Origin: Rebecca billardiae RCC1528 | Lineage: Eukaryota; Protista; Haptophyta | NCBI GenBank assembly: GCA_965240325.2 | Contig: OZ251229.1 | Coordinates: forward strand, 1,736,001 to 1,800,000 | Direction: 5' to 3' | Length of the DNA: 64,000 nt | In this document: positions 46,122-50,640 of the stretch, in pieces | Layout of the letters: every line of letters begins with the position of its first letter | Numbering within the stretch: position 1 is the first letter of the stretch | The notes under the pieces: generated by a model | Seen by the model: only the letters and a program-made list of their open reading frames with translations | Told to the model about the DNA's origin: nothing | The model's database searches: none | Translations under genes and position numbers: made by a program

Positions 46122-47054
46122 TTAGTAGGAGTATGGCGCCCAACCTATGTGCGTGCCTCTGTCGTCCCACGGAAGCGCGCCTGGGAACAGCGCCTTCGAG
46201 CAGTAGTCGAAGAGGGCGGCGAGCTCGGGGCAGGCCTTCGGGTAGCCCGGGCTCGAGTGGAACGGGTTGCGCGCGGCGCGCTTGCGCACGAGCGACGCGT
46301 CGAGGCAGCCGTACGGGTCGGCGCCGAAGTGCGACGCCGAGTTGAGCCGCTCGCCGTCGCGCACCGCCTGCGGCACGCCCCCCGCCGGGTCGATGCCGAC
46401 GAAGTGGAAGCGGCGCGTGGGGAAGCGGAGCGCGGCGCGGTGCATGTGCACGAAGCGCTCGCGCTTGAAGCCGAAGCTCACCACCGTCACGTGCTCCGGG
46501 TACCGCCCGGTCACCTCGCGGAAGCGGCAGAGCGAGAACAACACATTCTCAAAGGAATCTCGCGCGTGCTCCTCTGTGAGCGCGCGCTCGCGCACGCGTG
46601 GCACGCCGTCCCAGCGCATCGCGTCGGCGACCTCCCAGTAGCTCTGCGCCTCGCTGCGCGGGCCGGCCCCTTGCCGCGTCTCGCCGCCCGAGAAGAGCAG
46701 CAGCGCCTTCGAGTCGCGTGCCGTCAGGCGCACGCCGCGCCGGATGTGCTCGACAAACGTCGTCACCTGCCCGCGCTGGAAGGGCTCGAGCTCCCAAGAC
46801 TCGTCGCGCACGACGGACTCGGGAGTGAGGGCGGCGTGCGTCGTGAGCACGGCGTGCCCGGCGACGAGCACGAGGTGGTCGAGCTGCGACCATGGGTTGG
46901 GCTCGTCGACGCCGTCAAGCGCGACCGCATCGCGCTTGAAAGTTGATGAAGCGTGGAAGTGGGTGTGCAGCTGCAGGCCGAGGAAGACGATCGCGGCGAC
47001 GAAGAGCTGCAGTCGGCACGTGCGGAGCGACTGCCGCGAGTGGTGGTGATTCAT
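46122..47054 (-). CDS. DUF218-like (YOR238W-type) membrane-anchored protein
   Basis: N-terminal TM segment; HLVLVAGHAV, LLFSGGETR..AGPRSEAQSY, EEHARDSFENVLFSLCRF, FKRERF..HRAAL. Confidence 0.8.
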   Translation of the reverse strand: MNHHHSRQSLRTCRLQLFVAAIVFLGLQLHTHFHASSTFKRDAVALDGVDEPNPWSQLDHLVLVAGHAVLTTHAALTPESVVRDESWELEPFQRGQVTTFVEHIRRGVRLTARDSKALLLFSGGETRQGAGPRSEAQSYWEVADAMRWDGVPRVRERALTEEHARDSFENVLFSLCRFREVTGRYPEHVTVVSFGFKRERFVHMHRAALRFPTRRFHFVGIDPAGGVPQAVRDGERLNSASHFGADPYGCLDASLVRKRAARNPFHSSPGYPKACPELAALFDYCSKALFPGALPWDDRGTHIGWAPYSY

Positions 47055-47464
47055 CCTCGGCGAGGCGACACGCCCTTAGCGCACGACGCCGGTGCCCGCC
47101 ATGCTGCTCCGCCTCGTCACTTTTTCCATCAAAGAAAGATAGCGCAGCAGAGTGTGTTTTCTTGGCGGCCGGTGCGGGCAAGGGCAGTAGTGCGCGGGGG
47201 CCGCGCCGCCCGCCGCGCGCCCCCGTCAGCCGCCCAACCGCCGGCCGGCGCGGCGTCCGCAGCGGCTGCAGCTACTCACCCTGCCGCCCTGGTCGTTGAT
47301 TGGCCGCCGCAAGCAAGTCACGGCCGATATCGAATGGGCCGCGTCGCAGCCGCGAGTATTACAAACGACGAAGCACTGCGCCATCGTCCCCGACCAGCGG
47401 CTGGGATTGCTGGCTGCCTGTGCCAGCGGCGCGCGGCGCGCGCGGTCCGCGCTGTGCGCTCGCC

Positions 47465-49773
47465 ATGGGGAATGAAGGCTCGTCGCTGTCGAGCTCGGCC
47501 GAGGCGGACACGCGCGTGCAGCCGCCCACCCAGGTGGCGGTCACGATCAAGTGGCCGCACGGGGCGCGCAGCGCGAGCGTGTGCGGCACGTTTAATGACT
47601 GGAAGCAGACGGCGATGACGCCGTCGACGGCTGAGCCGGGCACGTGGGTCAAGGTGCTCGAGCTCAAGGCGGGGGTGCACCAGTACAAGTTCATCATCGA
47701 TGGGCAGTGGAAGCACGACCCGGCCGCGCCCACCGTCCTCGACGCGCTCGGCAACATCAACAACTTTGTGACTGTCAAAGCGCAGGCGGCGCACCCAAAG
47801 GCGGCGGTGCAGCAGGAGGCGAAGGTGGCGGTGCCCGCGGCGAAGCACGCGCGGAAGGGCGCGGCGGACGCGCACGCCGCCGCCTCGCACTCGCACTCCT
47901 CCTCCACCGAGGCCCTCCGCCGCTCGCGCCAGTGCTCCGACCCGTACATGCACTTTGACGACAAGGTGCAGAAGTACTCGCAGATCTGCCCGCCGAAGGA
48001 GGACCTGCTCGTGCAGCACGCGGCGTCGATGATGCTCCCGCCGCACCTGCTGCTCAACCTGCCCCACCTCGCGGGCGACGGCTCGAAGCCGCCCGTCCAC
48101 GTGCAGCTCAACCACATGTTTGTGCACGCCGAGCAACCGTCGGTCGACGTGGCGAGGCAGCCGAGCGCAGACGAAGACGTGGGCGCGATCGTCTTCTCGA
48201 CGTGCGTGCGCTTCAAGGACGCGGTTCGCGCGCGCGCGCGCGCGCGCGCACGCGCCGTGCATGCGTGCGCCGCCGCCGCCGCCGCGCCGCCCTCCCAGCT
48301 CACCTCGCGCCGCTGCCGCCGCGCGCGCGCCTTTTCGCGCGCGCGCCTTTTCGCGCGCGCGCCGCTCACTGCCTGCCCGTGCCTCCCGCCCGGCTCGGCC
48401 GCGCGCGGCGCGACTGCGGCTCGCGCGCTCGCTCGCGCGCTCGCTCGGCCTGTGCTTGGCGCAGTTCGTGACGAGCGTGCTGTACAAGCCGCGCTTCTCC
48501 CCCGTCGTGCGCGCGCGCAACGCGCTCGGCGGCCTGACCACCGGCTCAGGCGCGTTCCTGCCAGAGTCGAAGCGCGACGGCTCGTTTCCGAGAGAGATCC
48601 GGTTCCTCTCGGTGCGGATCGCCGAGACGCAGACGAAGCACGACGAGAAGCTGGGGCGGGACTACGTGGCGTACGAGGTGGAGACGACGCTCTGCGTGCG
48701 CGGCGCGCAGATGACCCTGCGCTCCACCCGGCGGTACACCCACTTCCGTCTGTTGGACCAGATGCTGAGACGAGAGTTTGGCGCCAAGGGCACGTACACC
48801 GCCTCGCGGCTGCTCCCGCCGAAGCGCACGTTCGGCAACTTCGACGCGGCGTTCGTGCAGGAGAGACGCGCGGCGCTGCAGGAGTACCTCGAGGCGTGCA
48901 TCGAGTCGCAGCCCATCGCCAACTCGCCTGCGTTCTGCCACTTCATCGACTCGTCCGCGCCCACCGAGGAGCCTTCGATCACGCGCTCAGACTCGAACGT
49001 GCTTCTCGAGAGAATCTCCGCCAAGCAGGTGCGTGTGTGCGCTGTGCGCGCGTGTGCGCGCGTGTGCGCGCGTGTGCGCGCGCGCCGCGCGGAGCGGCGG
49101 GGCGCGGCGCGGCGCGAGCGCGGCTCGGGCGCGGCGGGGGCGCCGGCGCGGCGCGAGTGTGCGCCGTCTCTCTGTCCGCCCACTTGCTGTGGCGGCGCGC
49201 GTTGCCGAGCCGAGCTGAGCCGAGCGCCCCTCCGCACGCACGCGCCGCCTACCCCCCGCCCCGCGCACGCACACGCCCCCCGCGCGCGCACTCCGCAGGG
49301 CTACCTCCTCAAGCAGTCCTCGCGCAAGGTGAGTTGGAAGTCGCGCTTCTTCTGCCTGTACGACACCGAGCTGCTGTACTACTACTCAGAGGCGGTGTCC
49401 AACCCGTTCCAGCCGCTCAACATCGTGCACGTGTCCGGGGCGAGCGTGTGCCGCGTGGCGCTGGTGAGGCCGCGCGCCGCCCGCCCGCCCGCCCGCCCGC
49501 GGCGGCGTGCCGCGCGCTCACCGCCCCGCGCCCCACGCGCGCCGCCGCGCCGTCCGCGCCGCGCCGCAGCCGTCGATGGCGCGTCACTTTCTCTTCACCG
49601 TGCGGACGAAGCAGCACGAGTGGTGGATCGCGGCCGACTCGGAACGGACGCGCGAGGAGTGGCTGCTCGCGCTGTGCAACGCGGGCGCGACGCTCACGAC
49701 GCAGACGCCCGAGCTGAGCGACGGCGGCAGCGTGGTCGGGGGCTCCTATGCCGACTTCGACTTGGCGAATCTG

Positions 49774-49814
<41 letters not shown>

Positions 49815-50640
49815 GGCTGCTGCGGGGGGCACGATGCCCGGTGAGCCCTCCTCGTCCTCGCTGTCCGCTGGCAACGGGAGCGTGCGCGGCTCGAGCGAGA
49901 GCTCGGCGATGCTCCACGCCAGCTCCTCGAGCGGCGTGGACGGCGGCAGCTTCAGCGGCGCGGGCGGCCTGCGCGGCCTCCTGTGGAAGCGCCCGTCCAA
50001 GGTGCACATTCTGCACGACCTCGAGAACGAGCCGTCTTGGGTGGCGAGGCACTTCCAGCTGATCCCCACGGAGCGGCTTCTCGTGTACGTGCAGGACGCG
50101 GCAGACCCGATCGACGACCCGCAGGTGCGTAGGAGCGCAGGCGGCGCGTCCGCCCGTCCTACAGGAGGCGGCCGGCAGCAGCCGCGACGCGCGCGCGCGC
50201 GCGTGCACCGGCTGGGCTGCGCGCGGGTTGTGTGCGCGCGAGGTTGCGTGCGCGCGCGCGTCACGCTGACGCGCCGAGCGCCCGCCCGCACCGCGCGCAC
50301 CCGTTTGCGCCGCGCGCCGCTGCCGCCGCCGCTGCCGCCGCAGGGCATCCTGCCGCTGTCCAACTTCGGCTCTGTGGAGGAGATGCACCTGCCGCACACC
50401 AACCGCTACGCGTTCAAGCTGTGCCCACCCGGCGCAGCGAGGGAGAAGGAGCCCCCGCCCACAGCGCCCGACGACAGCCCGCGCGTTTCGCGCGCGACGT
50501 CGCACGACGGCGCGGGGGATCCGCAGGTGGCGTGCGAGGCGTTCATCATGCTCGCAGACACGCCTGAGAAGCGGAGAGACTGGATGCGACAGATCAGCAT
50601 GCTGCTGCCGCGACCCTCGGGATCAAACTCGGCGAGCTGA
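47465..50640 (+). CDS. AMPK/SNF1 beta-subunit-like protein fused to PX and two PH domains; introns 48224-48464, 49029-49298, 49464-49569, 50125-50343
   Basis: MGNEGS myristoylation-type start; CBM48 (CGTFNDW, HQYKFIIDGQW, GNINN); ASC region (LPPHL, HVQLNHM, RFKDA|FVTSVLYKP); PX (RRYTHF, LPPKR, ERRAALQEYL); PH1 (GYLLK..WKSRFF..REEWL); PH2 (GLLWKR..W.ARHF..RDWM). Confidence 0.85.

What the first reader, a model, noticed from the sequence alone, without database searches (positions are those of the whole stretch)
47465..50640. AMPK/SNF1 beta subunit fused to PX and tandem PH domains
Seen: the spliced model gives a complete beta-subunit layout (MG myristoylation-type start, CBM48, ASC ending FVTSVLYKP). 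Canonical beta subunits terminate at this motif, but here the same exon continues without a stop into a PX domain, followed by two PH domains. Established knowledge: PX and PH domains commonly bind phosphoinositides, and AMPK is activated at endolysosomal membranes through separate adaptors in animals. Inference: a hard-wired membrane-targeted energy-sensing scaffold, an architecture I do not recognise from described AMPK/SnRK1 subunits.
Basis: partly seen in the sequence, partly recalled or inferred. Interest (0 to 1): 0.75.

Follow-up and report, generated by a model that had tools for sequence, protein, structure and literature searches.

The report
AMPK beta subunit fused to PX-PH-PH
A haptophyte alga encodes, in one gene, a complete scaffold (beta) subunit of the AMPK/SNF1 energy-sensing kinase that runs on into three lipid-binding domains; the fusion is real, is kept across haptophytes and transcribed as one message in a coccolithophore, and I found no paper describing it.

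Summary
A five-exon gene (47465-50640, +) has four GT..AG introns, all in phase 0. It encodes an MG start, CBM48, an ASC domain ending FVTSVLYKP, then PX, PH and a second PH (779 aa by exon lengths).

- **One gene:** the last ASC strand and the PX domain lie in one exon with no stop. In a related metagenome contig, ASC, PX and half of PH1 form one uninterrupted exon.
- **Conserved:** a scan of 1.84 billion proteins found about 15 clusters spanning the ASC-PX junction. All six near-full-length ones tested (668-775 aa) have AMPK1_CBM, AMPKBI (over cut-off) and PX; five show two PH stretches, one a single one.
- **Transcribed elsewhere:** two are full-length transcripts of Calcidiscus leptoporus. 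The named relatives are all haptophytes.
- **Annotation artefact:** Pavlovales sp. CCMP2436 lists two genes, but a 910-N assembly gap separates them.
- **Context:** the genome, a pavlovophyte by its 90%-identical SNF1 kinase, also has a canonical alpha and other beta genes.

The PI3P-type PX residues are invariant across the family. Most likely this is a beta scaffold that tethers the kinase to phosphoinositide membranes. Binding to alpha/gamma and to lipid is inferred. No RNA run was listed. No paper and no earlier scan note describes it. I class it as a new variant of a known kind.

The parts
46122..47054 (-). Neighbouring single-exon DUF218 gene, head to head with the fusion gene. About 410 bp lie between the two start codons. 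This arrangement is conserved in the two orthologous contigs.
   Evidence: ORF. Pfam DUF218 3.5e-7. The same neighbour is present in L014 and L016.
47465..48223 (+). Exon 1 (253 aa). MGNEGS start of the N-myristoylation type. CBM48 at aa 25-107 (47537-47785). Low-complexity linker. Then most of the ASC domain (about 47960-48223), with an 18-aa loop insertion.
   Evidence: AMPK1_CBM 86.4 bits. 74 bits to human AMPK beta-2, with a colinear weak second stretch on the ASC. The start is conserved as MGN/MGQ in the orthologues.
48224..48464 (+). Intron 1 (241 nt, GT..CAG, GC 0.83). It splits the ASC domain just before its last strand.
   Evidence: The junction ..RFKDA|FVTSVLYKP abuts exactly on Calcidiscus P0007 at residues 250|251. 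This intron is absent in L014, where the ASC is contiguous.
48465..49028 (+). Exon 2 (188 aa). Last ASC strand FVTSVLYKP (48465-48491). Divergent linker of about 34 aa. PX domain (about 48594-48959) with RRYTHF, PPK and ERR. This exon is the fusion point.
   Evidence: Translation. PX 57.7 bits. The best solved relatives are the SGK3/CISK, SNX17, SNX16, SNX27 and KIF16B PX domains.
49029..49298 (+). Intron 2 (270 nt, in frame and without a stop, GC 0.83 with no codon periodicity). Neither pavlovalean orthologue has an intron at this position.
   Evidence: PX and PH1 are directly joined in L014 and L016. E2|E3 abut on P0004, P0005, P0009 and P0010.
49299..49463 (+). Exon 3 (55 aa). N half of PH1, with the basic K..KSRFF motif in strands 1-2.
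   Evidence: PH 32.9 bits, over the cut-off.
49464..49569 (+). Intron 3 (106 nt, GC 0.92), inside PH1.
   Evidence: The Pavlovales sp. CCMP2436 gene model P0008 has the same junction (..SL|PS..).
49570..50124 (+). Exon 4 (185 aa). C half of PH1 (49570-49695). Gly/Ser-rich linker. N half of PH2 (about 49969-50124).
   Evidence: PH 21.9 bits on profile positions 64-103. Colinear with the homologues.
50125..50343 (+). Intron 4 (219 nt, GC 0.82), inside PH2. L014 has an intron at the same place.
   Evidence: E4|E5 abut on P0005 (646|647) and on P0181 (704|705).
50344..50640 (+). Exon 5 (98 aa plus TGA). C half of PH2, including its C-terminal helix. GC falls to about 0.58 after the stop.
   Evidence: PH 15.7 bits, under the cut-off. 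The homologous region folds as a seven-strand plus helix PH domain in the Calcidiscus model, pLDDT 65-91. Composition.

Best explanation
This is a single gene for a specialised beta (scaffold) subunit of the SNF1/AMPK/SnRK1 kinase of a pavlovophyte haptophyte.

The N-terminal 262 residues are a complete beta core: a Gly2 myristoylation-type start, a CBM48, and an ASC domain that in canonical complexes binds the alpha C-terminal domain and gamma. Canonical betas stop one to three residues after the ..LYKP strand. Here the chain continues through a flexible linker of about 35 residues into a PI3P-type PX domain and two PH domains.

The most likely mechanism is that the ASC domain assembles with alpha and gamma as usual. 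The PX and PH domains, helped by the myristoyl group, then hold that pool of the kinase on phosphoinositide-marked endomembranes such as endosomes, the vacuole or autophagic membranes. Other beta paralogues in the same genome would serve other locations.

Shown:
- one gene;
- the domain identities;
- conservation in Pavlovophyceae and Prymnesiophyceae;
- a single-ORF transcript in Calcidiscus;
- constraint on the domains but not on the linkers;
- a canonical alpha in the genome.

Inferred: assembly with alpha and gamma, lipid binding and its specificity, and localisation.
For: **One gene**
- FVTSVLYKP and the PX domain sit in one exon with no stop.
- In orthologue L014, ASC, PX and the PH1 N half form one uninterrupted exon.
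- Nothing inside the gene has intergenic-like GC.
- The gene is single copy in the genome.

**Family**
- phmmer of P0002:1-357 against 1.84 billion representatives gave about 15 clusters spanning the ASC-PX junction.
- P0004, P0005, P0007, P0009, P0010 and P0011 (668-775 aa) each have AMPK1_CBM, AMPKBI at 25.5-29.7 bits (cut-off 24.3) and PX. Five have two PH stretches and P0009 has one.
- P0007 and P0163 are MMETSP transcripts of Calcidiscus leptoporus. Other named members are Chrysotila and Pavlovales sp. CCMP2436.

**Gene model**
- Three exon junctions abut exactly on these homologues. The fourth matches the CCMP2436 gene model.

**ASC domain**
- The family ASC profile hits the ASC domain of solved AMPK beta-1/beta-2 core complexes (4eak_B, 2v8q_B) at 2e-8. 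The match ends at the chain's penultimate residue.

**PX domain**
- R345, Y346, H348 and F349 are invariant. P369, K371 and R385 are nearly invariant.
- The window copy aligns RRYTHF..PPKR..ERR with SGK3 RRYAEF..PAKR..QRR.

**Structure**
- The AlphaFold model of P0163 gives confident PX, PH1 and PH2 domains and disordered linkers.
- Foldseek finds the CISK/SGK3 PX (TM 0.80-0.87), tandem-PH proteins, the Bem3 PX-PH pair, the DAPP1 PH and AMPK beta chains.

**Selection**
- Domains are 51-84% identical to the pavlovalean orthologues, mostly with dN/dS 0.2-0.6. PH1 against L016 and the PH2 halves run higher (0.57-1.09).
- The two long linkers are 36-42% identical, with dN/dS 1.0-1.7 in three of four comparisons.

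**Partner**
- A canonical SNF1/AMPK alpha with kinase, UBA-like and C-terminal domains lies at G000:C11.
- It is 90% identical to 'SNF1-related protein kinase [Pavlovales sp. CCMP2436]'.
Against: - No transcript data exist for this genome, so the introns are inferred here.
- AMPKBI is not detected in the window's own exon pieces.
- AMPKBI scores in the homologues are only just over the cut-off. The genome's own canonical beta scores no better, 23.9-24.5 bits.
- The ASC region folds with low confidence on its own.
- Pavlovalean copies carry an 18-aa to roughly 40-aa loop insertion inside the ASC domain.
- No direct evidence shows that a C-terminal extension is compatible with gamma binding.
- No lipid-binding or localisation data exist.
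Confidence: 0.6

Rival explanations
1. The fusion is real, but the beta-like half no longer joins the kinase. The protein would then be a sorting-nexin-like endomembrane protein that uses an inherited CBM48 and a relic ASC domain for something else, for instance linking a glucan or another partner to PI3P membranes.
For: - The ASC match to Pfam is marginal.
- The ASC folds poorly alone.
- Pavlovalean copies carry loop insertions in the ASC.
- The genome already has other beta genes that could serve the kinase.
Against: - The ASC domain is among the best-conserved parts between pavlovalean orthologues, at 82-84% identity with dN/dS about 0.4.
- 25 ASC columns are invariant across the family, including LPP..L and LYKP.
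- The family profile matches solved AMPK beta ASC domains end to end at 2e-8.
- A relic would be expected to decay like the linkers.
- The genome's canonical beta scores no better on AMPKBI.
Confidence: 0.25
2. The protein does bind alpha and gamma, but the PX-PH-PH tail does not act as a simple membrane anchor. It might be a regulatory or autoinhibitory element, or a protein-binding one. It might also sequester the kinase away from its substrates as a negative regulator.
For: - PH2 lacks the basic K..(K/R)xR signature that PH1 has (read).
- PH domains often bind proteins (established knowledge).
- Nothing tested here measures lipid binding.
Against: - The four canonical PI3P-contacting PX residues are invariant or nearly so.
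- The nearest solved PX domains are those of endosome-associated proteins (SGK3, SNX17, SNX27, KIF16B); their PI3P binding is from general knowledge.
- PH1 keeps the phosphoinositide-type basic motif and resembles the DAPP1 PH domain.
Confidence: 0.1
3. It is a gene-model artefact. On this view there are two adjacent genes, a normal beta and a separate PX-PH protein, as annotated in Pavlovales sp. CCMP2436.
For: - GenBank lists KAJ1639168 ('immunoglobulin E-set', the CBM part) and KAJ1639169 (PX-PH) as separate neighbouring genes.
- Prokaryote-style gene calls on the metagenome contigs also split the gene.
Against: - A 910-N assembly gap (L018:4044-4953) lies exactly between the two CCMP2436 models. 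Neither model contains the ASC tail or the start of PX.
- The ASC strand and PX share one exon here.
- ASC, PX and the PH1 N half share one exon in L014.
- Complete Calcidiscus transcripts carry the whole ORF.
- The short Calcidiscus isoforms start in mid-PX, so they are not a separate PX-PH gene.
Confidence: 0.03

Closest known systems
Canonical AMPK/SNF1/SnRK1 beta subunits (human beta-1/beta-2, yeast Sip1/Sip2/Gal83, plant AKINbeta1/2)
   Same: - Gly2 start, CBM48 and an ASC domain ending ..LYKP, in the same order and with similar spacing.
- The beta subunit as the part that decides where the kinase sits. Yeast Sip1 goes to the vacuole, and myristoylated mammalian beta goes to lysosomal and mitochondrial membranes (established knowledge).
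   Different: - Canonical betas end within a few residues of LYKP.
- This one adds about 515 residues with PX, PH and PH.
- Targeting would be by folded lipid-binding domains in the same chain, not by a lipid anchor or adaptor proteins.
Plant AKINbetagamma (CBM48 fused to the CBS domains of gamma)
   Same: It is a precedent for lineage-specific domain fusion inside this kinase complex. It also turned up as the nearest Atlas structure cluster (CBS + AMPK1_CBM).
   Different: AKINbetagamma joins two parts of the complex itself. The haptophyte protein has no CBS domain and joins the scaffold to membrane-reading domains from outside the complex.
SGK3/CISK (PX domain fused to a protein kinase)
   Same: It has the nearest solved PX domain by sequence (8.7e-7) and by fold (TM 0.80-0.87). 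It shares the logic of a kinase sent to PI3P endosomes by a built-in PX domain.
   Different: In SGK3 the PX domain sits on the catalytic chain of an AGC kinase. Here it sits on the non-catalytic scaffold of a heterotrimer.
PX-PH tandems (phospholipase D1/2, yeast Bem3)
   Same: The PX domain is followed directly by a PH domain. The Bem3 PX-PH structure 6fsf is among the fold matches. An earlier scan note reports a PX-PH pseudo-phospholipase D fused to a NEK kinase in this same genome; I did not check that note.
   Different: There is no HKD or GAP catalytic part. There is a second PH domain. The sequence is no closer to phospholipase D than to other PX proteins.

Membership tests
AMPK/SNF1/SnRK1 beta subunit | CBM48 of the AMPK1_CBM type (PF16561) | tested here: met
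   86.4 bits against a cut-off of 26.8 in exon 1. 74 bits to human beta-2. The residues aligned with the carbohydrate-binding W, K, W, L and N of beta-1 are kept (which residues these are is from memory).
AMPK/SNF1/SnRK1 beta subunit | C-terminal ASC / AMPKBI domain (PF04739) | tested here: met
   - Not detected in the window's own pieces, because intron 1 splits it.
- 26.8 bits (cut-off 24.3) in orthologue P0002:1-130.
- 25.5-30.8 bits in eight homologues.
- The family profile against solved beta ASC domains gives 2e-8 over the whole domain.
- The window copy is colinear with all of these.
AMPK/SNF1/SnRK1 beta subunit | N-terminal Gly2 myristoylation-type start | tested here: met
   MGNEGS in the window. 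The orthologues have MGQEAS, MGNEAS, MGNEMS, MGNDIS and MGNEVS. Whether the protein is actually myristoylated cannot be tested here.
AMPK/SNF1/SnRK1 beta subunit | The chain ends just after the ..LYKP strand | tested here: not met
   The open frame continues for 179 more codons in the same exon and about 515 residues in all. This is the variant feature. Other beta-like open frames in this genome also run past YKP.
AMPK/SNF1/SnRK1 beta subunit | Assembles with the alpha C-terminal domain and with gamma | tested here: inconclusive
   The one complex prediction (Chrysotila alpha C-terminal domain with Calcidiscus ASC) gave no verdict. A canonical alpha with its C-terminal domain exists in the genome. 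I did not look for gamma.
PX domain, PI3P-binding class | PX fold (PF00787) with the R-R-Y/F, P-x-x-P-x-K and R motif residues | tested here: met
   57.7 bits. RRYTHF, PPK and ERR align with SGK3. These residues are invariant or nearly so in 26 sequences. TM 0.80-0.87 to the CISK PX domain for the Calcidiscus homologue.
PX domain, PI3P-binding class | Binds PtdIns3P | not testable with these tools
   This needs liposome or lipid-overlay assays.
PH domain (two copies) | PH fold (PF00169) | tested here: met
   - PH1: 32.9 bits in exon 3 and 21.9 bits in exon 4, on complementary halves of the profile.
- PH2: only 15.7 bits in exon 5. Five homologues show two PH stretches at 67-96 bits in total.
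- Residues 608-727 of P0163 fold as seven strands plus a helix.
- Tandem-PH structures are the top fold matches.
Plant-type AKINbetagamma | CBM48 followed by CBS pairs | tested here: not met
   No exon gives a CBS hit, and neither do the homologues.

The most novel reading that the evidence does not exclude
Haptophytes would have a dedicated AMPK/SnRK1 holoenzyme whose scaffold subunit reads phosphoinositides directly. This beta-PX-PH-PH would date from before the split of Pavlovophyceae and Prymnesiophyceae. The link between energy sensing and endolysosomal or autophagic membranes would be written into one polypeptide, having arisen independently of the animal AXIN-Ragulator route and the yeast Sip1 route. 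It would be a natural experiment showing that placing AMPK on PI3P membranes is a recurrent solution.
Probability: 0.45. Interest if true: 0.7.

Novelty: new variant of a known kind. Interest (0 to 1): 0.55.

Why it matters
Where AMPK/SNF1 sits in the cell decides what it phosphorylates. In animals and yeast, placement relies on lipid anchors and separate adaptors, and these are still being worked out.

A lineage that fuses the scaffold subunit to PX and PH domains gives a simple, testable case of membrane-resident energy sensing. Haptophytes are a major group of marine primary producers, and their nutrient and energy signalling is almost unstudied.

The finding also corrects a public annotation: the Pavlovales sp. 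CCMP2436 gene is split in two across an assembly gap. It also gives a name to unreviewed 'PX domain-containing' entries.

Tried and rejected
- **RNA evidence:** The look-up of sequencing runs listed no RNA run, so read laying was never called. Splicing in this alga is therefore unconfirmed.
- **Complex prediction:** the alpha C-terminal domain (P0226:378-491) with ASC (P0163:176-264) scored 0.30 against a mark of 0.34. That is no verdict, and it counts neither for nor against binding.
- **Metagenome scan:** the locus scan with P0002:100-357 gave only one weak fragment, L017.
- **ESM Atlas:** there were no usable feature hits. No cluster among the nearest combines CBM48 with PX and PH. This does not show absence.
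- **Word search at long lengths:** exon 1 found only a bacterial multi-CBM48 protein, P0001, which is irrelevant.
- **PF16579 in the genome:** it gave only sub-threshold hits. Reading the locus showed a normal alpha gene split by introns.
- **Antisense ORFs:** the long ORFs at 47321-48541 and 49420-50505 on the minus strand have no family match. I take them for GC-driven artefacts.
- **dN/dS:** synonymous change is compressed by the extreme GC3, so the ratios are only relative.
- **Method note:** to bring full-length relatives into the length range of the word search, I queried natural stop-free open frames that extend beyond an exon, and scored only the exon part with 'region'. The queries were window:47465-49717, window:48465-49841 and L023:2906-3946.
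- **Joined model:** the 779-aa spliced model was never built, searched or folded. Natural full-length homologues were used instead.
Full report
**The sequence**

The region 47465-50640 on the + strand reads as a five-exon gene. The exons are 47465-48223, 48465-49028, 49299-49463, 49570-50124 and 50344-50640. Every intron starts GT and ends CAG, and every exon is a whole number of codons.

Exons have the codon periodicity of this genome, with GC3 0.86-0.96 against GC2 0.40-0.57. The four introns are flat at 0.79-0.97 at all three positions. GC falls to 0.51-0.58 only outside the gene, so nothing inside it looks intergenic. The long antisense ORFs match no family.

**Domains, exon by exon**

| Exon | Pfam result |
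|---|---|
| 1 | AMPK1_CBM, 1.6e-24 |
| 2 | PX, 1.7e-15 |
| 3 | PH profile positions 5-57, 9.9e-8 |
| 4 | PH profile positions 64-103, 2.6e-4 |
| 5 | weak PH C-terminal helix, 0.023 |

Exon 1 begins MGNEGS. Exon 2 begins FVTSVLYKP and runs with no stop into the PX domain.

AMPKBI was not detected in the window's own pieces. Intron 1 cuts that short domain just before its last strand.

**Relatives**

A word search with exon 2 found two orthologues, 54% and 46% identical. Their contigs carry the same gene next to the same head-to-head DUF218 neighbour.

In the JGI metagenome contig L014 the introns sit elsewhere. There, most of the ASC domain, its LYKP strand, the linker, the PX domain and the first half of PH1 form one uninterrupted exon. 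The fusion therefore does not depend on any splice prediction. In that contiguous copy AMPKBI scores 26.8 bits, over Pfam's cut-off.

I then ran the exhaustive HMMER scan with P0002:1-357, because the novelty claim rests on which relatives exist. It gave 182 hits.
- About 15 clusters span the ASC-PX junction.
- Six near-full-length proteins (668-775 aa) each carry AMPK1_CBM, AMPKBI over the cut-off and PX. Five show two PH stretches and one (P0009) a single stretch.

Cluster look-ups named the sources.
- P0007 and P0163 are MMETSP transcripts of the coccolithophore Calcidiscus leptoporus. UniRef holds them as A0A7S0JEI5 and A0A7S0JEK3, labelled only 'PX domain-containing protein'.
- Other named members come from Chrysotila and from Pavlovales sp. 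CCMP2436.
- Several unnamed members sit on contigs barely longer than their ORFs. That suggests they are transcripts too (inference).

The window's junctions 1, 2 and 4 abut residue to residue on these proteins. Junction 3 is the same as in the CCMP2436 gene model.

**The 'two genes' alternative**

GenBank annotates the CCMP2436 orthologue as two neighbouring genes, KAJ1639168 and KAJ1639169. A run of 910 N lies exactly between them. Neither model contains the ASC tail or the start of the PX domain. The split is an assembly artefact.

The short Calcidiscus isoforms begin in the middle of the PX domain, so they do not show a separate PX-PH gene.

**The organism and its kinase**

The genome is 72 Mb in 41 contigs. 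It has a canonical SNF1/AMPK alpha gene with kinase, UBA-like and C-terminal domains. That gene is 90% identical to 'SNF1-related protein kinase [Pavlovales sp. CCMP2436]' and 70-76% identical to other hits, one of them named Chrysotila carterae. I conclude that the window comes from a pavlovophyte haptophyte.

If so, the family spans both haptophyte classes. That would put the fusion before their split (inference).

The fused gene is single copy. The genome has at least three further beta-type loci: one canonical at C20, a pair at C12 and C1, and one at C7.

**Is the beta half still a beta?**

- A profile of the family's ASC region has 25 invariant columns.
- It matches the ASC domain of solved AMPK beta-1/beta-2 core complexes at 2e-8, ending at the penultimate residue of those chains. 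It matches yeast beta at 6e-4.
- Between pavlovalean orthologues the ASC (82-84% identical) and CBM48 (about 80%) are the best-kept parts.
- The long linkers are 36-42% identical, with dN/dS 1.0-1.7 in three of four comparisons.
- The genome's own canonical beta scores no higher on AMPKBI, so the marginal Pfam scores do not indicate decay.

A predicted alpha-ASC complex gave no verdict, so assembly remains inferred.

**The tail**

- The PX domain keeps the canonical phosphoinositide-contacting residues. The RRY..F block is invariant, and the PxK and ERR positions are nearly so.
- Its nearest solved relatives are PX domains of endosome-associated proteins: SGK3, SNX17, SNX16, SNX27 and KIF16B.
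- PH1 carries a basic K..K-x-R motif in strands 1-2. PH2 does not.
- An AlphaFold model of the Calcidiscus protein gives confident PX (300-413), PH1 (440-556) and PH2 (608-727) domains joined by disordered linkers. Its ASC has low confidence, as expected for a domain that folds around its partners.
- Foldseek returns the CISK PX domain, tandem-PH proteins, the Bem3 PX-PH pair, the DAPP1 PH domain and AMPK beta chains.

**Known or new?**

Four full-text searches found no paper describing this architecture. No paper in the library holds both 'CBM48' and 'PX domain'. Earlier notes of this scan hold nothing on AMPK.

The sequences are public but unnamed. I could not run an InterPro architecture query, so the range outside haptophytes is open.

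**Verdict**

This is a new variant of a known kind.

Noticed in passing
L018:1123-7213 (Pavlovales sp. CCMP2436, GCA_026770615.1, MU631325.1): The public annotation splits the orthologue into KAJ1639168 ('immunoglobulin E-set') and KAJ1639169 ('hypothetical protein'). A 910-N assembly gap at L018:4044-4953 removes the ASC tail and the start of the PX domain.
   Followed up: yes
G000:C20:1434297, C12:1547826, C1:1319354, C7:3761486 (L006, L003, L002, L008): The genome has at least three further beta-type loci with CBM48 and an ..LYKP strand. The C12 and C1 copies gave matching hit positions and near-equal scores. In the C20, C12 and C7 copies the open frame runs on well past YKP into low-complexity sequence. 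C-terminal extension of beta subunits may therefore be common in this alga, unless an unrecognised intron follows.
   Followed up: partly
window 49029-49298: Intron 2 is 270 nt, in frame, and has no stop, so retaining it would only insert 90 residues between PX and PH1. Neither pavlovalean orthologue has an intron there (L014, L016). That suggests a recent intron gain in this species.
   Followed up: partly
window 48224-50343 (introns) against the flanks: Introns are far more GC-rich (0.82-0.92, with GCGCGC-type runs) than exons (0.63-0.72) or intergenic DNA (0.51-0.58). This three-level composition makes gene structure readable from GC alone.
   Followed up: partly
G000:C11:594500-602500 (L023), minus strand: This is the canonical SNF1/AMPK alpha gene, split by several GC-rich introns. 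Immediately upstream on the same strand lies an open frame of repeated ARM-like units of about 40 residues (..GALGAVVGAM.AH..HAGVQEQAC.AL.NIC..).
   Followed up: partly
P0007, P0163, P0161, P0162 (Calcidiscus leptoporus transcripts): The two full-length isoforms differ by a 4-residue indel (DLSG) in a PH1 loop. Two shorter transcripts have a different 28-residue start and join the ORF in mid-PX. These are probably partly spliced or partial assemblies.
   Followed up: partly
window 47537-47785: The CBM48 keeps the residues that bind alpha-glucan in animal beta-1. Haptophytes, however, are known for beta-1,3-glucan stores, not starch or glycogen (general knowledge). What this module binds here is unclear.
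   Followed up: no
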